Translations under genes and position numbers: made by a program
Part shown: positions 18,465-33,022 of the stretch, piece after piece
How the letters are laid out: every line of letters starts with the position of its first letter
Numbering within the stretch: position 1 is the stretch's first letter
Notes under the pieces: generated by a model
The model's database searches: none
What the model was told of the DNA's origin: nothing
The model's input: the letters and a program-made list of their open reading frames with translations, nothing else
Source: Podarcis erhardii
Lineage: Eukaryota
DNA length: 64,000 bases
Reading direction: 5' to 3' (one strand)
NCBI GenBank assembly: GCA_964252035.1
Contig: OZ176204.1

Positions 18465-18500
18465 TCTCCAAGGACACTCTCTCCAACTCCATCTGCAGAA
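18465..18500 (+). CDS. ABLIM1: ABLIM1 exon, 36 nt (SPRTLSPTPSAE)
   Basis: ttgcAG / GTaagt, phase 0-0; identical to recalled ABLIM1 peptide. Confidence 0.96.
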
Positions 18501-18598: not shown

Positions 18599-19008
18599 TG
18601 ACTACCAGTAAAACAGTATTATTGCTTGTTGCGTCCTGCCTTCTTGTAAGCTGCCATTCTGTGACTATGCAGTCCACTGTGCTGAATGCAATTCAGCAAC
18701 AAAATGCACATGGCATTTATTTAGCTTATTGCCCTCAATGCAATCAATCTCATCTCATAATGGCAAGCTCGGGTTTTGCTTTAAAAAAATCAAACGACTC
18801 AGGGGCAGTATGGTTACATAACTGGGGCACTGAAATTTCAGAGGTCAAAGGTGAAGAAGTGAGCAGGGAGCAGGATCAGTAACTGTTGTTAAGTAGTGGA
18901 AACAAACTGAATAGTTGGAGCTGGTAAGCAATGCAATCATATATGCAGGGTTCCTTCTGTATGACAGTTGGGAATGAATGGAACAGACTATTCAACATCC
19001 TTACCCAG

Positions 19009-19361
19009 TAAGGTAAAGGTAAAGGGACCCCTGACCATTAGGTCCAGTCGTGACTGACTCTGGGGTTGCGGCGCTCATCTCGCTTTACTGGCCAAGGGAG
19101 CCGGCATACAGCTTCCGGGTCATGTGGCCAGCATGACTAAGCCACTTCTGGTGAACCAGAGCAGCGCACGGAAACGCTGTTGCCGGAGCAGTACCTATTT
19201 ATCTACTTGCACTTGATGTGCTTTCGAACTGCCAGGTTGGCAGGAGCAGGGACTGAGCAACGGGAGCTCACCCATCGCGGGGATTCGATCCGCCGACCTT
19301 CTGACTGGCAAGTCCTAGGCTCTGTGGTTTAACCCACAGCGCCACCCAGGTCCCTATATTA
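19009..19361 (-). mobile_element. Sauria SINE, near full length
   Basis: tRNA-like head at right end, CTTCCGGGTCATGTGGCCAGCATGACT core, (CCTTTA)n tail; 10-bp TSD CCTTACCCAG at 18999-19008 and 19362-19371. Confidence 0.93.
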
Positions 19362-19711
19362 CCTTACCCAGGAATGTATAGCAAATCTTGGAAGGGTTAA
19401 AGTGGGGTAAGGTGAATTCAGGAGCCCCATCTTCATGCTAGTATGAAGCCTCTGGGATTTTTGGGTCTTCCATGTTCAGTGTTTCAATGATAGACTTTTT
19501 GGACAGGCTAATATTTTTTTAAACGGCTCCCAACTCTCTTAAGTGTCAGCTTCCATGTTATGAGGGAAATGCTTTTTTGTAACATCTAGTTTGTCTCCAA
19601 CTGTCAAGGAACTGAAGCAGTGAGTTACTCTGGAAAAACATTTTAGCAGTATCTTTAACCATTATAACCCTGAATATTATAATATATATGTAAAATATTT
19701 TTTTACCTCAG

Positions 19712-19841
19712 GGATATCAGGATCTTCGGGATCGGATGATACACCGGTCTACCAGCCAGGGGTCCATTGGTTCTCCTGTGTACAGCCGTCACAGCTACAC
19801 TCCCACAATGTCACGTTCACCACAACATTTTCACAGACCTG
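19712..19841 (+). CDS. ABLIM1: ABLIM1 exon (GYQDLRDRMIHRSTSQGSIGSPVYSRHSYTPTMSRSPQHFHRP)
   Basis: cctcAG / GTaagg, 130 nt, phase 0-1. Confidence 0.97.
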
Positions 19842-20368
19842 GTAAGGCCCAATGTAGGCAAGTGGCCAAGCCACAGAATCTTAGCTTCTTTATGTCATAG
19901 AATTGTATAGAAAAGGAATCTGACACTTTAGTATTACATGACTTCTTGCATATGGTTTGGTTCTCTTCCCCCTTCCTTTTCACTTTTTGCTATTTTTAAT
20001 TAAGCTGCCTAGAATCTATGCCAATTAGAGAAAAGCACACTATTTCCTGCAATGAGTCTTGTTCTTAGGGGGAATGTTTGAGTGTTAGGATAAAGCTATT
20101 ACTATTGGGAAATTAAACTGGTTGCTTATCCTTTCTTTTATAAGTGGCAAGTAATGTTGAATATCATGCTATAGGGACCTTTTTAATGAGTCCTTGGTTT
20201 CAGACTGTGGAATACTCCTGATAATCAAACCTCGCAGTCCACATGACCTCTTTGCTTTGATGTTGAAATGGAAGGCCATCTTTAAAAACAGGAAAATTAT
20301 TTATTTAAAATCTTAGTGTGAAGACAGACATAAAGAAAGTTTTAAAAGTTAAATGCAAATTCCACAGC

Positions 20369-20421
20369 CCTTCCTTCCTTCCTTCCTTCCTTCCTTCCTT
20401 CCTTCCTTCCTTCCTTCCTTC
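20369..20421. repeat. (TTCC)n microsatellite
   Basis: Direct reading. Confidence 0.95.
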
Positions 20422-22668
20422 TTTCACATCTGAAATGTCCACTGTACACACTAGTGAATCAAATGCTGGCTCAGTTGTTAGGCTTGCCTCCCCACTTATG
20501 TCTTCCTTTAAAAAAACAACATTTAATTTGTGCCTTCTTAATTATTTTAAAGGAAACTTAAGCTTATTAAACATAAATCTCTTCTGAGTGTTTGAGGCAG
20601 GAAGAGATTTCTTGGTGGCATCACAGGGGCCAGCCCTGTGAATAGCTAAATATAGCCTCAAACTGGCAGAATTGTTCTTTTCAGAGCTTTATCCTGCTGA
20701 GGAAAGCTATCAGCTGGTCACTGTGAATAACTTTGCAGGGTAGCACACACAGCTCTTAAAATGTTGTGCCTGCATTCACCCCTAGCTAGCCATTAAGGTC
20801 TACAAATTGCAAACCAGTTCATCTGTTAAAGTTGCATGCACAAAACAGTGAAATTTCTACTTCAGAGATGTGCATTAAGCTGTATTTTTCTTTGAAGTCT
20901 TGCCTTTAAAACGTACATTCCTAAATAAACTGCTCGTGGGTAGCATTGTGAGCAAAATCTGGAAATTAAAATTGGTTAGCCTTACTCTGGAAACGGTATG
21001 GAACCCCAAAACTAGGGTTTGGGATTCAGGTTAGGGAGAATTGCATAGCTACCTTATCCAAAAGCAGGTGAAGCAAATGTCTAGATGCATGTTTTTCACA
21101 AAGGAATTTATTAGTATCAAGTTTGAGTGCGTTCATATGATGATGGTAAGCTTAAAATGTTGAAGAGGTTTTTCATTTAAAAGGCACAAATGAAATTTGG
21201 TTTATCATATAGCACTGACAAGATGATGATGAATTCTTCAAGATATACATGGTTGAGCCAACTGAATCTATTGGAATCTATGAAAAGGCTTCACATTTCT
21301 GCTTCTTGTGATTATAGCTCCATATATGCTAGATGATAAACAAATCCAGGCTTTCTTAAGAGTTTGACAGAGCACAATGGCTAGTTGTTTTTATTTCTGT
21401 GGGAAATAATGATCCAAGATGGCATTGGCCTCATTCAGACATAACGCTCAACAATAATTAAGGACAAATGAATGAGCCACTCCTCTTTCCTTCTCTGGTA
21501 TGGCCTCAAGGAAAAGATCAGAAGCTATCACTTCCATTTTTAACCACCTGCATTTTGGCATTAGGTGTACTGATCTGTCAGTATAATATAGTCAAAAGCA
21601 ATAAAATATAGTTGTTAATCTCCAACTGATTCCATTTCAGGAAGGTTCTATATGACAACTCTTAGTATGTGGATCTGTGAACATAATCTATGAACAGAAT
21701 TTACTATTTCAACACTTTTAATCCTGTAATTGTAATTAGAATGGTACAGTGTTTCCTTTAAACCATGATTTAACTAACTTAAGAGTGTGAAATATGACAA
21801 GATGTAGGACATGCCATTTCTCAAAATTGTATTTGTGAGATTTATTAAGATTGAGACAATGATTCAGTTTGCTTTGCTGATATTTTGAATAGCTTTCTAG
21901 CATTGTGTATTTAAATAAATGCAGGAAATAAAGTGGTTTCTGAGAGCAGTTCAAATTACTGGGGAAACAACCAGCATTATATTTTGAAATGACTGGGAAT
22001 TTTTCCCCTAAAGTTGGACAAGGAACACCGTTATTCACATAATAGCAGATATTTGCAGATTTCTTGTAACCCCAGATCTCAAAATTTCCAGAATGATTTT
22101 GAAAGTGACCTAAAGGCACTTTTTGAAAATTCCCTCATTGATAAACCACATGAAAGGCTACATTGATTAGAATATTCTATTCAAAAATGGCTCTCTTCCA
22201 GTATCTATATTATATTAAAAACTTTCATCATAAGGCCCCCAAGGTGTTCCTAGTGTTCTTAGTGGAATGACTAAACTCTTCTTCCAGAATTTCTTAAAAC
22301 AATTTTTAAAAGGACTTTGTACCCCTGTTTTGGCATTGTTTGGTCAGGTTGTCACCCAGACAGCTGCTGCTTCTGAAACTCATTTGGGTTCAGGGTGTGT
22401 GATGCATGAATAATATTTTTTTGCTATACAGAGAGGGTACTAATTTAAGCCTGGACTAAGGAAGTATCCAGTGGCAATCTTGAGTTTTCACCTTCTTCCT
22501 ATGACTTTTCCTAATATCTGTGTAATCTTATTTCTTCCTAGTTTGTTTAGTGCTTTTCTCCCTCTGTTCTCTCCCCGCCTCCAGCCACTGGCCCTGCTTC
22601 TGTCTTATTTTGTGTTCTCTTTTCTTTGTTTCCATTTTGTCTTGCCTCACGATTTCTTGCCGCTGCAG

Positions 22669-22788
22669 AGCTGCAGTCTAACGGTGTGCAGCGGTTAGCC
22701 CACCTGCGCACTAGCAGTCCCATCTCCACCCACAATGACTCCCGCCCCTACTCCCCTTTCCGACACCACTTCATCCCCCATGTCAAAG
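22669..22788 (+). CDS. ABLIM1: ABLIM1 cassette exon, 120 nt (ELQSNGVQRLAHLRTSSPISTHNDSRPYSPFRHHFIPHVK)
   Basis: Long pyrimidine tract, ctgcAG / GTaagg, phase 1-1, 40 codons, no stop; resembles the recalled 40-aa ABLIM1 alternative insert ending FRHHFIPH-K. Confidence 0.88.
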
Positions 22789-23798
22789 GTAAGGAGACAG
22801 GCCATTCAAGCTAGTGTCAGACAGACTGGAGATTTATTAGCATTCAAGGAAAGCTAATAAGGCACATCTCCATCAAGTGGCTATCAGCTGTGTGACTCCC
22901 GGCATGCCTCAGACCTGCGTCATAATGACTGTGTTAGACCTGACATACCTTCTCCATCTTCGAGGAAGTATGTCCTTTCTAAGGGTCTCCTTAGGTGAAG
23001 TGCTCCATTTCTTATGTTTTAGGAAAGTGTGGCTCTTTGAACAGCAAGGGGACAGAATTTTGCTGCCTTGGAAATGTAACTCTGGAATTGCCATAACTCT
23101 GAATCTCGCTCTTCAAACACATTGGCATGTCCTACATTTTCTGTAAGGTCTCTAGTAGCACCTCTCCCCATGCTTCAACTTCCAACACAAATAACGCCAT
23201 GTCTGTCGAGCTTCGCACAGAGACATTTTTCACTTACAATGCCTTCTAGCAGAGCCTCCTTCCCTCAAATCTAAGGCCAGATTCAGGTCATTTTACCAGC
23301 TCATACACTGGCAAACCCCAGCGTTGAACAACAAGGCTTGCTCTAATATAACAAATGCCAGCTCCTGTCTTAGGAATGCAGGAAGCTTCCTTATAGCATA
23401 TCTACACTTATTGGCGGTGGCTTTCTACAGTTTCAGACAGGAAGCTTACCTAACCCTACCTGGAAATGCCAGCAATTGATACTGGGAGTTATCGCAAGCA
23501 AAGCATGTGCCTCTACCACTGGGCAAACCACCATGTGAGGCTGCATTCATATAACATTTTTATTGTCTGGAGTGACATGGTACAATCACTACTTATTTTC
23601 AAAAGCTAAGATTCATCTCTCTTAAAAACTATCTTCATAGTTTAGCTTGCTTTTCATACCGTCACACTATGTAACTCTTAAAATTCCCTACCTGTTCCAG
23701 TTAGCTTGCTCCATCTTCCTGCCAGTATATTGATCCTCCATGATGACTACCCTACCACTTTGTATACAAAAAAAGTATCAGGTGTTATAATGATTGTA

Positions 23799-24178
23799 AT
23801 ACAACAAAACCAAAACACCAAACTGGCTTGCAAATATAAAGGACAATTTTATTTAGTTCAGCAAATTAGAGTGCAATGTGCATATCAAAGTCTGGAGATA
23901 CTTATAGACATACAGTCAACTAGTCGCACAACTCTGCCAGTAATGTATATAGTAAGTAATAGTGTCATAGCACAGTTGAAACAAGTGAATTGTTCTACAG
24001 TTAGTTATCTACTGGAAGCGCAAAGTCCTGTAAGTGGGAATGGTTGCAAGAAAGGGTTCTTCACATAGCCATATGTAGATCTCCAGGCTTTGATATGCAC
24101 ATTGCACTTTAATTTGTTGAACTAAGTAAAATTGTCCTTTATATTGCAAGCCGGTTTGGTGTTTTGGTTTTGTTGTAT
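23799..24178. repeat. ~100-bp inverted repeat with 179-nt spacer
   Basis: 23799-23899 versus 24079-24178: 5 mismatches and 1 indel. Confidence 0.85.
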
Positions 24179-25757
24179 CCTGCCACTTTGTCTACCCATT
24201 TTCCTCCCGGTATCCATCCCTCCTTGTTCCCAATGTGCCCTATATAATTTTTAACTCCTCCTGAATCACTCAATCAGGAGCTGATGTGAGCAGCAGTAGA
24301 TTAGGTGAATTGCTAAAAGCCAGGAAGATTTATGCTCAAGTTATACTACACATTTCAGTGTCCTGAACTAAAGTAATATGGATGTTAAATAGATTGCATG
24401 GTTTCCATGGGCCATTATCAGAAATGATAATAGTTCTTAACCTCCTCCTCTCTCCAGTAATAAGACACACTTTACAACCTTTTCGTTCCGGTTTGTTTTA
24501 ATCCTCACCATAGCAAAACTCACTTCATCCTTTACACATGGGGTCCCTTAAAAACAGAGGCACAATTCATGTTTGCATGCACTTGATCCATAAACTCCGG
24601 TTCAACATTTCCATGCTGCAGACCTACTGTAGCATCCTCCTCCTTTCTCAAGGCATTTCCATTCTCTCTCATAACGGTAGAGCACCTTTAGATTTGACAT
24701 AGCAAACCTTCACTGAGGTTCAGCTCATAGTTAGCAGTTTCTGAAATAAAGATTTTCGTGTGTAACTCAAATTTGTGTCCTGCTTTGTCCATTCAAATGA
24801 CAAAATCGGGAAAAACAGAAGGGCAATTAATTGTATCTTGTACAATAAAGATATGGGATATACTTCCATGCGAAAGTGCCAGCATGACTATGTGTGCATG
24901 TGCCTAGGGGTGATGTTTTGATATCTGCAGTCCACACTCAGCAGTAGCTTAAGGCCATGCTGGGCTTCCCCACTTCTGCACAAAGTTAATGGTGGCAATT
25001 ATGGAACCAGCACAGGCTCTGCTGTGTGCTCAGATGCCTTCACAATGTTCATACAGCATCTCCCAGGAAGAAAGGTGCTTCTCTTTCTAGGAGTTCTTCC
25101 CATGTACTTGTGATGCCAAACTATGACATGAGAGTACAGGAAGCTACCATCCAGATGTGTGCTAAGGTGATTTGTGCTAGATTTTCAACCATTTTAAATT
25201 ACAATTGGCAATATTGAATAAATCAGTAATTAAATGGACCTAAGGTAATGATTGATTGTATATTAATCTGATTGTGACTTTCTGGAGGGGAGAGTTCATC
25301 TTCTTTGAAAGTTTTGGCTTTGAAGCGTTTTGAAATGGCATGTTTCAAGTAGGGTGGATAGGTAAAAAATCCCTGCATGTATTTTGCTTTCATGGGGTTT
25401 GCCTCACATACATTATATCAATCACCCTTAATCTGACCCAGCAAGGTTGGTTAGTAATAAAACTTATTTGTTTTATTGTTTATTAAGTTTGTATATTCCC
25501 TTCATTTGAAGATTTCAGGGCGGTTAGCAACATAAAAATACAAGATGAAAACACAAAATGCATAATAAAAACAAGAACAAAACTAAGCAATAACCCCCTC
25601 CCCTCCATCTTCCAAAATTGCCACTGCATTATAGGTATAGGGAGTTTAACAAGTAGGATGGGGAGAAAATTCAAGTCCTTATATAACAACTGATTGTCAG
25701 TCACATAGATTACAAAAAAAAACCAGACATGAGAAAGAAAAGCAGTAGACAGGAACA

Positions 25758-26177
25758 TGTGAGAGGGGAAGGATTAAGATTTGCGTGTCTAGACCCTGCA
25801 GCCACCCCTCGTTGAGGAATAAAACACACCAGGACACAGATATTAGGTTAATGTTGTTGGGCATATTTTGGCCACAACTTTGTTGATTACAGAATGTGAG
25901 TGGTAATTGGCTTAGGCATTGAATGGACCCAATTATATCTGACTCCTGCCCACTGCACAGGGAGTCCAGTAAGGGTAAACCACCAGAAGGGGGAGCCCCG
26001 TCAATGCAGACCAACTCGAGCTCCCCCAGGTGTTCCTGACAGGGTCGTGTCATGGCCCTAGCCCCACCCCGGGCTTCGGACAAGATCCACACCTCTGGAT
26101 TCCTTTAACGGAATACCCTTAAGGATGGAGGGGCAGGTGATGGCCACACCTCCCCTCCCCCATCAAAAGGTAAAACA
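25758..26177 (-). mobile_element. Possible solo LTR
   Basis: TG...CA bounded ~420 bp, GC-richer than flanks, minus-strand aatcaacaaagttgtggcc resembling LTR poly(A) region; no TSD found. Confidence 0.35.
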
Positions 26178-26492
26178 ATGCCTTTGTGATGATTGCTACG
26201 AGGTAGGCGAAAACCAAATGGCCTGTGCCATGCACCAATTGACAGTTTCTCTTAAAAATTATTGATAAGCTTATGTGCTGGATTGAGAACCAAAAAGTAG
26301 CACTGTGCTTCCCATGACTGCTTTCTGCACTCCCCCACCCTTTAATTACATGTGCTTACATAGCCATATGTTTTTTTCTCCTTTTTTTAGTTGAAAAGTA
26401 CCACCATGGTTCTCATGAACGCATTCAGCTCTATTCTCCCATTTGTTTTATCCTCATTTCTGTACATGACTTTTTTCCTTTTCTTTTCTCAG

Positions 26493-26513
26493 ATGCGGCT
26501 CCATTCTACATAG
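26493..26513 (+). CDS. Candidate 21-nt microexon (DAAPFYI)
   Basis: tgac-ttttttccttttcttttctcAG / atag|GTatgc; phase 1-1, frame-preserving, stop-free; no homology support available to me. Confidence 0.45.
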   Translation: MRLHST

Positions 26514-27148
26514 GTATGCCATGTCTCAGCTCTCTTGAGACACCCCTCTCCAATACCCAGAGGGACTTTGTGTTGTTGTTCTTACCCATGTTCACTCCCT
26601 CTTTGCTGATGCTTCTTTCCTTCCAAGTGTCATACTAACAGATACATTTTACTGCTTTAGCTAACAACATGTTAGGCACAATTCAGCTGCTCATATTGGC
26701 CTCTATTCACAGATGTGTAAATCTGTGGCTCAGTCTGTAGCACAGGGGTGTTTGACCAGAATATCAAGGGTCCTGTGTTCTTTCCATTTAACTTAATGCT
26801 TGTCAGTAGAGATTACTGTCACCCTTCAGCTTTCTGTAAATAGCATTTCAATGCAAATTTCCTAGAGAGCCAAACAGAGGTTTAAAAGTGTGATGAAAAG
26901 CTGATAACCAATTCCTCTTTTTAAAAAAGTTTAATGTCCATGTTTGTAGGAGATTTCTAGCAGGTTGAGAACCACATGATGGTGCATCCCAATTTTGTAC
27001 TGTAAAATGTTGCCTTGAACAAACAAAGTTAGCATAGCATAAAAGCCACATGGAGGCCACTTGAAGCCACATAGCAGCCGCTCCATGAGGACTGGTTTCC
27101 ACTGTCCATTTTCTCTCCTCACCACTGCCACACATGCATGATGTGTAG

Positions 27149-27196
27149 AAGAGCTGCCATGCAGAGACAGTTTCAAGTTGTTTGACTTGCTTTCAC
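27149..27196 (+). CDS. Candidate 48-nt cassette exon (EELPCRDSFKLFDLLS)
   Basis: gtgtAG / cac|GTAAGT; phase 1-1, stop-free; AG-free pyrimidine-rich stretch upstream; prediction only. Confidence 0.3.
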
Positions 27197-27395
27197 GTAA
27201 GTCCTGTTAAATGCACAATTAATTTCCCTCCGGCTCCTGAGAGCAAATAAAGAGGTTACCATAACCCACTGTAAATACACCACATCAATTGATTTAATGT
27301 TTATTTTCTAATAAATGCATATTCTACAGAAAATATATGTCTCTCTCCAAGCAGTCATTCACATTTTTTTAGCACTGATACTAACTAATCGCTAG

Positions 27396-27434
27396 TGTCT
27401 TTGAAAAGCCACATGTATGAGGATAGACATAAAC
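27396..27434 (+). CDS. Candidate 39-nt cassette exon (VSLKSHMYEDRHK)
   Basis: TACTAACtaatcgctAG / aac|GTAAGT; phase 1-1, stop-free; prediction only. Confidence 0.3.
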
Positions 27435-29098
27435 GTAAGTTCTTACTGATCCTGAGCTTTAGGGATGAGTTGAGTAATCTATGAACTGAATGAATTGGAT
27501 TCCCTCCCTTCAGCATATTGATAACCCACTCCCAGGTTTTTAAAGGAACAGTTCGCACATCAGAAAACTATATCAGAGAGTGCCACTCAATAGCAGACAC
27601 AGGCCCTTTCCAGGGAGGCTCACCTGATGTTGACTCTATTAGGTACCTTATGGTGCCACTTGTAGACTGTTTTATTTGTCTAGGCGTTTTAGATACCATT
27701 TGAATAATGGTTTTAATCTTGCTTAGCTCTTTTTAATCTACTTTTAATATTGGCTTCCGCTGTTACACTGGTTTTATAATTGCTGTATTTGTTTTAGTTG
27801 ACTGTTTCTAATCCTCTTCATTTGTGAGCTGCTCTGAAAACCCTTTGGGTTGAACAGCAGGCTAACAACATAGGACATATACATGAGATAAAGTGATTCA
27901 GAGTCCCGTTGACATAGTTCAAGCTTGAAAAGCTTGGACAGGTTTTATATGCTGTCCTTTCCATGCAAACATAAAACACGTATATGTGTAGCTGTATTGC
28001 ACACAATTGGAGTTTATACGACAATGCATTGGTCTCCCTGTTGATTAGAAGGAATCTCCAGTCCAAACTTTCAGTCACTCACTTAATCACTATGTATCAC
28101 TGGCTGTGCAGCTGGCATTGAAAGGAAAACATACTTTGACTGCTTCTGTTCATGAATGAAAATGTGGGAAAGTGTCAATAGAACAGCTCCCCATGTGCCC
28201 CCTCCCCACCATCTAGCAGTTGTTGGATTACAACTCCTGTCATCCCTGACAATTGGCCATGCTGCCCAGGACTGACAGACAGGCCCATGCAGAGGGGAAG
28301 GCAGCCGGGTACATTTGTCCTGGACCTTTAGAGTGCTAAGCTGGTTGGGGGAGCCTGCCAGGGGCCTGCTGGACTTGCGCTGTTTGAGTTTATAACTTTA
28401 TTCTAACAAGACTCCAGCCCCTGGCCCCAGACAAGTTCTGTATGGACCTGCTGACAGGAGTTAGAGTTCAACCTCATTGCGAGGGCCACAGGCTCATCAT
28501 ACCTACCATAAGAGAATTTCCTGGAGATGAGATGAAAAACAAGACCCTAGAGAGAAGGGAGTGTAGTTATTTATTTATGCTAGTTTGATCAATCAAAGAA
28601 ACAGCAAACCAGAATAATTAATCTGAAGCTTTTCTCCTCGTACATGTATGATCATTTGAAATAAATGATTCTCTTGTAAGGGTGCAGATAATTTGACTTG
28701 GGGTTTGCCTAGCAATGACTTTGCCAAATGCCATGACTCTTCAACTGAAAGTGTGAACCCTGGCTGATATTAAATCATTACCACGTAACTTCCCATTCCG
28801 CTCCACGGCTTGTCCATTTAATTTGACTGCATTCTTCCTCACGCATGCTGTTGGAATGTACAAATGAGAGGATGCAAGCTGCCTGATTTCCAGCCTGATG
28901 TGAATGTCTCTCTTAGCACATACTAGCAGTGCCTTCCAATGCTAGCCATATTTCCTGACTACCAACTATATATATTTTTTGTTCGTTTCCTCCCTGGTTT
29001 TCCTTTTCCACCCTCTTTTGGTTGGGTTTTTGAATTATGCCTGCTTCTTTACTGCTGTTTTTGTTTTTGTTTCTGTTTCCCCATTCTCCTCATTGGAG

Positions 29099-29203
29099 GC
29101 AATGAGCCGTCCAGCGGTCGGAACTCCCCTGCCCCTTACCGGCCAGACAGCCGCCCTCTAACACCAACTTACGCTCAGGCCCCTAAACATTTCCATGTTC
29201 CAG
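29099..29203 (+). CDS. ABLIM1: ABLIM1 exon, 105 nt (GNEPSSGRNSPAPYRPDSRPLTPTYAQAPKHFHVP)
   Basis: cattggAG / GTagga, phase 1-1; matches recalled ABLIM1 GNEPSSGRNSPLPYRPDSRPLTPTYAQAPKHFHVP. Confidence 0.96.
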
Positions 29204-29731
29204 GTAGGAGCTGGCAATGTATGTCTTGGTGTCCTGTCATAGTGTAGACCAGTAGCCTTTGTAACCCTTGTCTTGTCTCCATTATCTCATGCTGTTTAGT
29301 TCGTTTGTTTTTTTGGAGTATACCATGAACTGCTTTGAAATGCAGGGCTTGTTGCTTTTATTTTGAGAGGAATTAGAAAAAGCTGGCTGCAGAAAGATTT
29401 AAGCGTTGAAATATTTTGGAATAGGGAGGATACAATGTAGTTTGGTAAGAGCACCGTGTACATGGCCCAAGCCACTTCTTGGTAGCACCAAACACATCTT
29501 ACCTGTTACTTCCTGTTTTTCATGACTTTAAGAGGCAGGGTTCAGGTTACAATCCTAAACAAAAATGCTAGGAAGCCCATCTAATGGAACTCAATGGGAC
29601 CTGAGCAAGCATACTTAGATTGCACTGTCAAAACACTTTGCATTTTTTTGTGGCAGACTGTGTAACAGACTGTGCTTTCTGTTAAGAATAATATTGCTTA
29701 AACAGACTCATTGCATCTAGTTGTTACTGTG

Positions 29732-29745
29732 GCGCCCTCTGGTAG
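29732..29745 (-). promoter_or_regulatory. Candidate CTCF site
   Basis: Minus strand CTACCAGAGGGCGC, one mismatch to core. Confidence 0.4.
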
Positions 29746-30978
29746 GCTTCATTTGGGGCCTTAAATCTGTAGATTCCTGTGTGAAGTAGTTCTCATTGAT
29801 GCAAATCATTAATTTAACATTAAAGCTTCACATTATTTACTTTGCTTCTGTACACTTTTTACTGCTTGAAAAGGAGCCAGTGATACTGCTAGAAGTTCAG
29901 CCTTGTGTATATTACACTCTGCTTTTATAGTATTGTCTGCTGCAAATGCTGCAGATAACCTGGTAGCCATTTTCTAGCAATGGCTGTGGCTTAATGTTTC
30001 TTGAGCAGTCTCAGTGAGCAATGGATATGTCATTATTCAGTATTAAGCAAAACATTGAGTTGGGGTTAGTTTGTATCAAAGAACTCTTGTTCCAATGTAT
30101 TTTGAGGAGATAAAGAAGTATGGCCCCACTCTCTTCCGTGTCAATTAGAGTTGTTTCTCTGGAAGTAATAGAGACGTGCCTGTCTGGCTGAAAAATTTGG
30201 CCACACACTTAGGAGCTACTGCTGCTGATATAACATCTGCCTTCATGGTCATGGATCTCCAAGACATTCTTAAGAGATTACACACATATTGTAACTGCTT
30301 AACATACAGAGAAGGTATAGTGGAGGGTGGGGAATGTGGAACTGAACCAACAGCATAACCCTTTTTATGGTTTAGAGTTGGACCATTACTGATATATTCT
30401 AGCCATTAATTAGCTGCTACACATCTAAGAGGGATAGCCTGCATTAAACATATCTTGCCACTACGAGGCTGCAATCCCACAGTGGCACTACTGAGTAAAC
30501 ATGCGTAGGATAAGGCTACAATATAGCATTCCGTTTTCTTTGTCTACTGAGTTACCCTAGATAAGTCTTTTTTTTAAAAAAAAAAAAAACAACCGAAAGA
30601 ACATGGCTTTTGGGTTATTTATTTTTGACTCTACCTCAAGCTTTCTAAGAATCCTCTCTCCATTTTGTTTGTGTTGTCATATTAATTTTCAGTGTCTGTG
30701 CATTTTATAATTAAGAGGAACATGAACTTTTCCTTGAGAGTATATCCAAGCATGTATTTAAAAAAACCAAATGAAAACATTCTGTAGTATTTAAGTCATT
30801 GCTAGAGAAATACTGTATTAAGTTCAGGCTCTATGACATAAAATGCTTCTGAATATGAACATATGTGGTTGGTGGTGTGAGTTGGTTGTACCACCAAACC
30901 AATAAGTGTGGTAAGAAACATTGCAGAGGCTCAATAGAATCACAGAGAATATGGCTGCATTTCAAAACGGCAGATTTA

Positions 30979-31068
30979 CACTGCAATCCTTTACACATCT
31001 ACCTGAAAGCAAGTCCCACTGTTCTCAATGAGACTTACTTATGAGTAGGCATACATAGGATTGCACTG
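30979..31068. repeat. ~90-bp palindromic interspersed repeat (representative copy)
   Basis: tgcaatcct...aagtcccact..aatgagactt...aggattgca; relatives near 7383, 7880, 11764, 29546, 30466, 39553, 51886. Confidence 0.6.
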
Positions 31069-31564
31069 AATGAAACATGTTCTGAAGCCTTGACTGTAAA
31101 TGTACATCATTGCTATTTGTGATGTCTGTGGTTGGAGGAGAAATTGAGCTGCTGTTGCACAATTTCCCAGTAGTCATTTGGTGGCTATTTTCCGCCAGAA
31201 TGCTCCTGTCTCCACCCCGGCATATCTCTTTTGGTTGCACCTCCTATGAAATGTTTATCCCACTAACAATCTACTAAGACATTAAACTGAATGGCCCATG
31301 CCTTTAGGTACATCACCATGTCGCCAACTCTATATGTCAAAGATTTCATGTCATCTGTCTGTGATATTTTCCCATCTGTTTTTGTGTTTTGTTTTCATCA
31401 GATACTTCTCTCTTTTATGTGATACTGAAATTAGTTTCCTGGATACTTGTGCCAAGTCCTCAGTTTGGAATACCTGTCAATTTAGTGTTTGATTTCTTCC
31501 CTCTTTCCCAGCATTAATTGAAGATGTCCAAATAGTCTCATGTTTCTGCTTTTTATTTTTACAG

Positions 31565-31612
31565 ATCAAGGCATCAATATTTATAGAAAACCTCCTATCT
31601 ACAAACAGCATG
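31565..31612 (+). CDS. ABLIM1: ABLIM1 exon (DQGINIYRKPPIYKQH)
   Basis: tttacAG / GTaaac, 48 nt, phase 1-1; NIYRKPPIYKQ is a conserved abLIM/dematin motif. Confidence 0.97.
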
Positions 31613-33022
31613 GTAAACCTTCTTCTTTCTGTTTTCAAAGTGGGACAATCTTAATATATTAAATAGCTGCATGACTGAACTGTTGACTTACCCAGAGCTT
31701 TGTCTTCATGTTAACTTTTTGTAACATTAGTGGATTATTGCCTGCTTTATCACCTTTTATGTTTCATTTTTTCTGATGTAAACAGAGGGTGGTTGAAAGG
31801 CAGAAAGATACAGTAATCTCTCATCTTGTTTGGCAACAGACTGGTTGAAATTGTGCAAGTCAACTCCCAAGCAAGGCACTGGGTAACACAAGCAGACCTG
31901 GCACATAATGTGCTTTTAAACTCTTGGTCTTGCTTGCTGGGCAAGGCCTGCTCATTGCGCCGGCTCTGGGAGTGCTGCAGATACACTAGCCACAGGGTAG
32001 CGCCACGGTTTGACTATATGCAATTTTCACACATATGCATAATGCTTGGAACCAAACCCATGTAAGATGAAGGATTACTTTACACGGTATGCCTCACTGC
32101 TTTGAATGCCGTTTTCCAGAATATGATAATCCATCACGGCTACTTTGTTATGTAGTACCCTGCTTGCAAACAGGAATAGTACATGTCTTATTAGCCTTTA
32201 TTTCAGTCATATAAGCTGCAGTCATGTAGGGTTGTTTTACAGCTAGCAGGCCAGCATTCCACATGCAAATTTGCTTAAAGATATTGCACTAATATATCTG
32301 GAAATATTGAAAGCAACAGATCTCTTGGAAACTGTCATAACTAGCTAAAAAACTCTGACAGGAACAGTTAGGTTTTTTAATCAGTTTTCCTGTCCAGTGG
32401 AATACCCACTTTAATAATATGAGAAATGATGGGGAAAGTCACTTGACCAAGGCATGGTCCCAATGAATACTGAAAGAGCATAATCCAACAAGCACGCTCA
32501 TCTCTCTCACGACCCTCATTCATTTTATTGATGCTGGCATGGGAGCAAGCTTGGTCTCCATTGTGTATTGCTGTGCTCGACTGAGCTTAAAATGAGGTAG
32601 AACTGACAAGAATCTGTTTTTGAGTGCAGGGGCAAAGCAGTAGAATGTCTGTAGTAACTACAGAGTGTCTTTCAACATGTGCCCAGTTGACCGCTCCGAG
32701 TAAAAAACGAATAGTGTGTTTTCATAGCAGGGTTATTCCTCAGCGGTTCTGCACTGACAGTGGAGCATTCACAATTAGCAAATCACAATTTCTTTTTAAC
32801 AGCAAAGGTCACATTGCAGTATTTGCTGAGGGAATTTCAGTAGTCTTTGGAGATCTGGCTACGAAAATACATTTTTCACAGTATCTAGAAAGAAACTAAT
32901 TATAATTATAGCTTTTAGGTAAAGACTCATGGAAACAGAAATAGTAGGAAGATCAGGGGTGGCTGAGGGATGCAAAAGTTTTAGATTGCTTGAGGGCTGA
33001 TGGTTATTATGGGGTGGTATTT

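What the first reader, a model, noticed from the sequence alone, without database searches (positions are those of the whole stretch)
26493..26513. Candidate unannotated 21-nt microexon (DAAPFYI) in ABLIM1
Seen: textbook acceptor (tgac, 20-nt pure pyrimidine tract, CAG), 21 nt, donor TAG|GTATGC; phase 1-1 matches both neighbouring exons and no stop is introduced. A TACTAAC (QKI-type) element with a ctaac half-site lies ~120-150 nt downstream (26633-26665). Inference: regulated tissue-specific microexon adding an aromatic motif to the disordered linker. I do not recall it from mammalian ABLIM1.
Basis: partly seen in the sequence, partly recalled or inferred. Interest (0 to 1): 0.7.

Follow-up and report, generated by a model that had tools for sequence, protein, structure and literature searches.

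The report
Known conserved 21-nt ABLIM1 microexon
The 21-base segment is a genuine, evolutionarily conserved alternative microexon of the actin-binding gene ABLIM1, but it is already present in public gene models of wall lizards and many other reptiles, so it is a correct call rather than a discovery.

Summary
It follows TGAC, 21 pyrimidines and AG, and is followed by GTATGC.

It is a real exon. The same exon, with AG and GT intact, sits in a small island of conservation in otherwise unalignable introns of a skink (Lerista) and an iguanian (Phrynosoma). Two of the three variable exon sites are synonymous.

It is not unannotated. RefSeq models of Podarcis muralis, P. raffonei, Lacerta agilis and Zootoca vivipara carry exactly QHFHRP-DAAPFYI-GNEPSS. 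The window's other exon peptides match Podarcis exactly. Variants (DAASFYI, DTASFYI, DGASFYI, DAASFFI) are modelled in geckos, skinks, anguimorphs and iguanians. A 15-nt form (ASFYI) is modelled in a turtle and a marsupial.

No copy was found in a rattlesnake intron or in two bird introns.

The downstream element survives only as a pair of CUAAC pentamers with fixed spacing, conserved in all three lizards. QKI-type control is therefore plausible but unproven.

Verdict: observation confirmed, exon real and alternative, novelty claim refuted. Interest is low.

The parts
26493..26513 (+). 21-nt cassette microexon of ABLIM1, phase 1-1, encoding (D)AAPFYI(G)
   Evidence: The exact peptide is in lacertid RefSeq isoforms. 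Orthologous exons with AG/GT are in Lerista L004:40347-40367 and Phrynosoma L005:46794-46814.
26466..26492 (+). 3' splice site: TGAC branch-point candidate, 21-nt pure pyrimidine tract, AG
   Evidence: TGA(C/T), tract and AG are conserved in the 3-lizard alignment A2.
26514..26522 (+). 5' splice site GTATGCCAT (approximate PWM 6.6 bits, weaker than the neighbouring exons at 9.0 and 11.3)
   Evidence: GTATGCCA is invariant in the three lizards.
26623..26665 (+). Conserved downstream intronic block CAAGT...CTAAC(A)...CTAAC; CUAAC at +122 and +148 from the donor; candidate STAR-protein (QKI-type) splicing enhancer
   Evidence: The pentamer pair lies at +134/+160 in Lerista and +103/+130 in Phrynosoma. 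Both are invariant in A2.
19712..19841 (+). Upstream constitutive exon ...SPQHFHRP(G), ends in phase 1; joined directly to the microexon in the lacertid models
22669..22788 (+). 120-nt alternative exon (E)LQSNGV...IPHVK(G), phase 1-1; joined to the microexon in Gekko, Elgaria and Phrynosoma models
29099..29203 (+). Downstream exon (G)NEPSSGRNSPAPYRPDSRPLTPTYAQAPKHFHVP, itself skipped in some isoforms

Best explanation
Window 26493-26513 is a genuine alternatively spliced 21-nt microexon of ABLIM1 in a lacertid lizard genome (exon peptides identical to Podarcis). When included, it is spliced between the QHFHRP exon (or the optional 120-nt exon ending HVK) and the GNEPSS exon. It inserts seven residues, DAAPFYI, into the region between the LIM domains and the villin headpiece that matches Pfam AbLIM_anchor; that this region is disordered is assumed, not tested here. 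The conserved core is A-(S/P)-F-(Y/F)-I. The exon is old: a 15-nt form (ASFYI) is modelled in a turtle and a marsupial. Squamates use an acceptor 6 nt further upstream, which adds D plus one variable residue (A, T or G). Shown here: the exon's existence in gene models of 14 squamate species plus the Lerista genomic copy, conservation of AG, GT, length and frame, and alternative inclusion. Inferred: an exon this short probably depends on its very strong polypyrimidine tract and on the conserved intronic block about 100-160 nt downstream. That block holds two CUAAC pentamers 26-27 nt apart, the kind of site bound by STAR proteins such as QKI, which promote inclusion when bound downstream of an exon. 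The protein-level consequence (a new short hydrophobic or tyrosine motif next to the serine-rich GNEPSSGRNSP stretch) is also inference.
For: Sequence and phase. Rarity of such splice pairs in the window. Conserved island in otherwise unalignable intron: window 26467-26544 vs Lerista at 83% and 26477-26709 vs Phrynosoma. Exon alignment: 3 variable sites among the three lizards. Site 5 is G/T/A and always synonymous, site 20 is A/C and synonymous, site 9 is C/T and gives P/S. RefSeq and GenBank protein models carrying the insert. These include the exact DAAPFYI in four lacertids. Isoforms without the insert in the same species: P0026 and P0093 vs P0182 and P0183. Window exon peptides identical to Podarcis. 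Insert (residues 381-387 of P0182) lies inside the PF16182 match 234-596. CUAAC pair conserved with constant spacing: (14 shared pentamers vs 0-4 in shifted controls). ABLIM1 is a reported QKI splicing target in cardiomyocytes: PMC7782589 and PMC10202634.
Against: Expression and tissue pattern therefore rest on other groups' computed gene models. Those models are predictions, and some could be carried over by homology. For the QKI part: the full ACUAAY core exists only in the window (GCUAAC in Lerista, UCUAAC in Phrynosoma). The core to half-site gap is 22 nt, just outside the published 1-20. Bipartite QKI-like motifs are no more frequent in the window than in shuffles (13 vs 16.9 expected). 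The papers do not say which ABLIM1 exon responds to QKI. No function is known for the inserted peptide.
Confidence: 0.92

Rival explanations
1. The exon is real, but its inclusion is not controlled by QKI. The CUAAC pair would then be bound by another factor (SF1 or another STAR protein), or be conserved for another reason. The decisive control would be the long pyrimidine tracts (PTBP-type repression) or another tissue factor.
For: Only CUAAC is conserved, not ACUAAY. The spacing is 22 nt. Motif frequency in the window is at chance. A second 18-nt pyrimidine tract lies about 100 nt upstream at 26371-26388. Pyrimidine-rich sequence is also conserved upstream.
Against: Two UAAC-containing pentamers with fixed 26-27 nt spacing about 100-160 nt downstream of a short exon is the classic layout for QKI-promoted inclusion. 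ABLIM1 is a documented QKI target.
Confidence: 0.45
2. The segment is a chance pseudo-exon: a splice-site-like pair in an intron that is never used.
For: Introns hold many decoy sites. The same strict scan found two such pairs on the non-coding strand. No reads from this genome were seen.
Against: AG, GT, 21-nt length and frame are conserved in Lerista and Phrynosoma inside an isolated conserved island. Substitutions at the variable sites are mostly synonymous. The peptide is present in gene models of 14 squamate species, a turtle and a marsupial.
Confidence: 0.03
3. The exon is an annotation artefact spread between RefSeq models by protein homology and is not transcribed in lacertids.
For: All protein evidence consists of computed models. 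Ensembl/UniProt models of Podarcis, Salvator, Gopherus, Terrapene and Chrysemys lack it.
Against: Each species' model carries its own genomic variant (DAAPFYI, DAASFYI, DTASFYI, DGASFYI, DAASFFI, ASFYI). Independent non-RefSeq models (Phrynosoma JD844_006821) include it. Genomic splice sites are intact wherever they could be read. Homology transfer would not explain purifying selection on an intronic 21-mer.
Confidence: 0.04

Closest known systems
RefSeq ABLIM1 isoforms of Podarcis muralis (XP_077786376.1, XP_077786377.1), P. raffonei (XP_053245096.1, XP_053245103.1), Lacerta agilis (XP_033005469.1, XP_033005472.1) and Zootoca vivipara (XP_060130745.1)
   Same: They carry the identical junctions and identical peptide QHFHRP-DAAPFYI-GNEPSS. 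All other window exon peptides match Podarcis exactly.
   Different: Nothing detectable. The window shows the genomic exon behind these models. Whether this exact assembly is the annotated one was not established.
ABLIM1 microexon forms in other amniotes: DAASFYI (Varanus, Elgaria, Hemicordylus, Tiliqua, Phrynosoma), DTASFYI (Anolis), DGASFYI (Eublepharis), DAASFFI (Gekko), ASFYI (Pelodiscus, Macrotis)
   Same: Same position in the protein, same phase, and the same core A-S/P-F-Y/F-I followed by GNEPSS.
   Different: Lacertids have Pro where the others have Ser. The turtle and marsupial forms are 6 nt shorter. Phrynosoma keeps an internal AG exactly where the short form would start.
Striated-muscle microexons controlled by QKI, MBNL and RBFOX, e.g. 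the Snap23 microexon (PMC12064062)
   Same: A short frame-preserving cassette in a cytoskeleton or trafficking gene, with STAR-type motifs in the flanking intron. The host gene is a reported QKI target.
   Different: No expression or binding data exist here. Only CUAAC is conserved, not ACUAAY. ABLIM genes are not named in that paper's held supplement.
SRRM4 (nSR100)-dependent neuronal microexons
   Same: Length, frame preservation, strong flanking-intron conservation, and location in a non-globular protein segment.
   Different: No UGC motif lies between the pyrimidine tract and the AG in any of the three lizards, so the defining cis-element is missing.

Membership tests
Conserved vertebrate cassette microexon | Length of at most 27-30 nt, a multiple of 3, no stop in the host frame | tested here: met
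   21 nt, phase 1-1, reads D-AAPFYI-(G).
Conserved vertebrate cassette microexon | Splice sites, length and frame conserved in other species, with conserved flanking intron | tested here: met
   Lerista and Phrynosoma genomic copies keep AG, 21 nt and GTATGCCA. They sit in an island inside an otherwise unalignable intron.
Conserved vertebrate cassette microexon | Alternative inclusion: isoforms with and without the exon | tested here: met
   P. muralis X1/X2 have it and X12/X13 lack it. In Tiliqua 7 of 11 models have it. In Pelodiscus 7 of the 15 listed models have it, 5 join QHFHRP directly to GNEPSS, and 3 did not match the GNEPSS search pattern (one checked, P0192, skips that exon).
Conserved vertebrate cassette microexon | Junction reads in transcriptomes of this genome | not testable with these tools
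Annotated ABLIM1 exon (RefSeq) | Exact encoded peptide and junctions present in deposited gene models of the same or sister species | tested here: met
   DAAPFYI lies between QHFHRP and GNEPSS in 7 lacertid isoforms. Window peptides match Podarcis.
QKI response element (NACUAAY-N1-20-UAAY) | ACUAAY core | tested here: inconclusive
   Present in the window (TACTAAC, 26633-26639). The orthologous sites are GCTAAC (Lerista) and TCTAAC (Phrynosoma).
QKI response element (NACUAAY-N1-20-UAAY) | UAAY half-site within 1-20 nt of the core | tested here: not met
   The gap is 22 nt in the window (26640-26661). Start-to-start spacing is 26-27 nt in all three species.
QKI response element (NACUAAY-N1-20-UAAY) | Motif occurrence above chance or conserved | tested here: inconclusive
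   Frequency in the window is at chance (13 vs 16.9). However, both CUAAC pentamers are conserved at matching offsets.
QKI response element (NACUAAY-N1-20-UAAY) | QKI binding and QKI-dependent inclusion | not testable with these tools
   The literature says only that ABLIM1 is a QKI target and names no exon.
SRRM4-dependent neuronal microexon | UGC enhancer motif close upstream of the 3' splice site | tested here: not met
   There is no TGC in the 30 nt before the AG in the window, Lerista or Phrynosoma.

The most novel reading that the evidence does not exclude
The exon is an ancient amniote 15-nt microexon (ASFYI) that squamates lengthened to 21 nt by adopting an acceptor 6 nt upstream. It was lost independently in snakes and birds. 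It is switched by a conserved dual-CUAAC STAR-protein (QKI) enhancer, making it a muscle/heart- or glia-type rather than an SRRM4-type microexon. None of this appears in the searchable literature.
Probability: 0.3. Interest if true: 0.35.

Novelty: already known. Interest (0 to 1): 0.18.

Why it matters
The result shows that a reader working from raw sequence can pick a true 21-nt exon out of a 6.3-kb intron. The exon itself is already in public gene models, so nothing new is added to the ABLIM1 gene structure. What remains of modest value is descriptive. The microexon is shared by lizards, a turtle and a marsupial. It differs by a 6-nt acceptor shift. It seems to be missing from a rattlesnake and from birds. 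It carries a conserved downstream CUAAC pair that would make a clean minigene test for STAR/QKI control in a gene already known to be QKI-regulated in heart. No paper in the searched library discusses this exon.

Tried and rejected
Exons were searched singly and by reference.
- Representative search with the 34-aa downstream exon: only 15 hits, mostly ORF-like genomic fragments. Its use was to supply P0008 as an entry point.
- First region search across the junction: it ranked only insert-free isoforms and so was uninformative for the question. A second search, restricted to sequence downstream of the junction, solved this.
- Bird introns: contigs L001 and L002 span the whole intron but hold no usable copy. 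A 9-nt match (CATTCTACA) lies at a similar relative position but has no AG or GT. MAFFT did not align it to the exon. I treat it as chance or a decayed relic.
- Snake intron: the Crotalus intron showed no copy even with short-word BLAST.
- Repeat origin: rejected, because there are no other copies in the window.
- Literature: two searches for an ABLIM microexon, a general microexon search and two supplement searches found nothing on this exon. A paper id recalled from memory was not held.
- Human sequence: no human contig was fetched or compared. P0010, a mammal-like protein of unknown species returned, was read once and not pursued.

Full report
**Observation.** One search shows the sequence exactly as described. 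It reads catgac, then a 21-nt pure pyrimidine run (26470-26490), AG, a 21-nt segment (26493-26513), then GTATGC.

The neighbouring ABLIM1 exons were mapped by translation and motif search:
- 19712-19841 ends ...SPQHFHRP plus one base.
- The 120-nt exon 22669-22788 reads (E)LQSNGV...IPHVK plus one base.
- 29099-29203 reads (G)NEPSSGRNSPAPYRPDSRPLTPTYAQAPKHFHVP.

All junctions are in phase 1, so the segment reads D-A-A-P-F-Y-I and regenerates the Gly codon.

A strict scan for acceptor-donor pairs 3-60 nt apart found only two on the + strand of the whole window: the known 36-nt exon 18465-18500 and this segment. It found two on the - strand, which measures the chance background. The segment is not part of a repeat.

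The stop-to-stop ORF around the downstream exon retrieved ORF-like products of genomic contigs. Their contigs turned out to be avian, judged by the SPVPY signature.

The representative search gave a Lerista edwardsae model, P0008, whose 71.7-kb locus could be fetched. BLAST of window 19000-32000 against it aligned the exons. Within the 6.3-kb intron it aligned only two islands, one of which is 26467-26544 at 83% identity.

The alignment shows Lerista with ...tttctcag | 21 nt | gtatgccatgtc. The 21 nt differ from the window at three sites. A Phrynosoma locus has tag | 21 nt | gtatgccac.

Across the three lizards the three variable exon sites are:
- site 5 (G/T/A), always Ala;
- site 20 (A/C), always Ile;
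- site 9 (C/T), Pro in the window and Ser in the others.

AG, GT, length and frame are all kept. This is the signature of a coding exon under purifying selection.

**Is it unannotated?** No. A region search limited to sequence downstream of the junction listed isoforms regardless of what precedes GNEPSS. Parsing them and the members of their clusters gave the insert in the models below.

| Insert | Species |
|---|---|
| DAAPFYI (7 isoforms) | Podarcis muralis X1/X2, P. raffonei X17/X23, Lacerta agilis X3/X5, Zootoca vivipara X4 |
| DAASFYI | Varanus, Elgaria, Hemicordylus, Tiliqua, Phrynosoma |
| DTASFYI | Anolis carolinensis, A. sagrei |
| DGASFYI | Eublepharis |
| DAASFFI | Gekko |
| ASFYI (15-nt form) | the turtle Pelodiscus and the marsupial Macrotis lagotis |

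The window's other exon peptides occur letter for letter in the Podarcis proteins. The first one occurs only in Podarcis, so the window is Podarcis or a very close lacertid. Isoforms lacking the insert exist in the same species, so the exon is alternative. It is combined freely with the 120-nt exon: HVK-DAASFFI in Gekko, HFHRP-DAAPFYI in lacertids.

**Distribution.** Phrynosoma has an internal AG exactly where the 15-nt form would begin. This fits an ancestral 15-nt exon lengthened by 6 nt in squamates, which is inference.

No copy was detectable in the gap-free Crotalus horridus intron, and none of the eight snake models seen carries it. Two bird contigs spanning the whole intron have no usable copy, and none of the many bird isoforms listed has it. 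A 9-nt match at a similar relative position, without splice sites, is chance or a relic.

Placental mammals were not tested.

**How it probably works.** The insert (residues 381-387 of P0182) lies inside the Pfam AbLIM_anchor match 234-596. This is the linker between the LIM domains and the headpiece. That the linker is disordered is general knowledge about this region, not something tested here. The conserved part is a small hydrophobic or aromatic core next to the Ser/Pro-rich stretch. A new short linear motif or Tyr site is the likeliest effect, but this is inference.

On the RNA side, the acceptor is unusually strong. The donor is moderate (6.6 bits on an approximate PWM written from textbook frequencies, against 9.0 and 11.3 for the neighbours).

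The downstream intron holds a conserved block with two CUAAC pentamers. They lie at +122/+148 in the window, +134/+160 in Lerista and +103/+130 in Phrynosoma. In an alignment-free test, 14 of 240 window pentamers recur at matching offsets in both species, against 0-4 in shifted controls. The CUAAC pair is among the few that are not T-rich.

ABLIM1 is reported as a QKI target in human and mouse cardiomyocytes (PMC7782589, PMC10202634). By established knowledge of QKI, binding downstream of an exon favours inclusion.

Several points count against a firm QKI call:
- Only the window has the full ACUAAC core.
- The gap to the half-site is 22 nt.
- Bipartite motifs of this kind are at chance frequency in the window.

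No UGC lies near the acceptor, so the SRRM4 class does not fit.

**Comparison and verdict.** The exon is a member of the ordinary class of conserved cassette microexons, and it is the very exon already modelled in lacertid RefSeq records. Literature searches found no paper that discusses it.

The reading 'real alternative microexon' is supported. 'Unannotated' and 'not in mammals' are not supported. QKI control remains a reasonable, testable hypothesis. Novelty: already known. Interest: low.

Noticed in passing
window 24473-24749 (core about 24536-24600, TGCATG at 24574-24579): A deep-intronic block between the 120-nt alternative exon and the microexon is conserved in Lerista, Phrynosoma and also the snake Crotalus. 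It has an invariant TTGCATG.ACTTGAT.CATAAA containing the RBFOX consensus UGCAUG. It is non-coding in all 220 ABLIM1 proteins seen. Because it persists in the snake that lacks the microexon, it more likely serves the 120-nt exon.
   Followed up: partly
No protein isoform has an insert between the microexon and GNEPSS.
   Followed up: partly
window 29099-29203: The GNEPSS...KHFHVP exon is itself skipped in some RefSeq isoforms (P. raffonei X14 and Pelodiscus X14 read QHFHRP|DQGINIY), so three consecutive phase 1-1 cassettes sit here.
   Followed up: no
window 26371-26390: A second 18-nt pure pyrimidine tract followed by AG lies about 100 nt upstream of the microexon acceptor. The tract is conserved as pyrimidine-rich sequence, but the AG is absent in Phrynosoma, so it looks like a protein-binding tract rather than an acceptor.
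   Followed up: partly
L005:46794-46814 (Phrynosoma platyrhinos): The orthologous exon has an internal AG (ATGCAG|CT...) exactly at the start of the 15-nt ASFYI form modelled in turtle and marsupial. It is a possible tandem acceptor 6 nt apart.
   Followed up: no
L001:4445-4453 and L002 about 3400 (bird contigs): CATTCTACA / CATTCCACA lies at about 61% of the bird intron (the lizard exon lies at 59%) but has no AG or GT. It is either a chance 9-mer or the decayed remnant of the microexon.
   Followed up: partly
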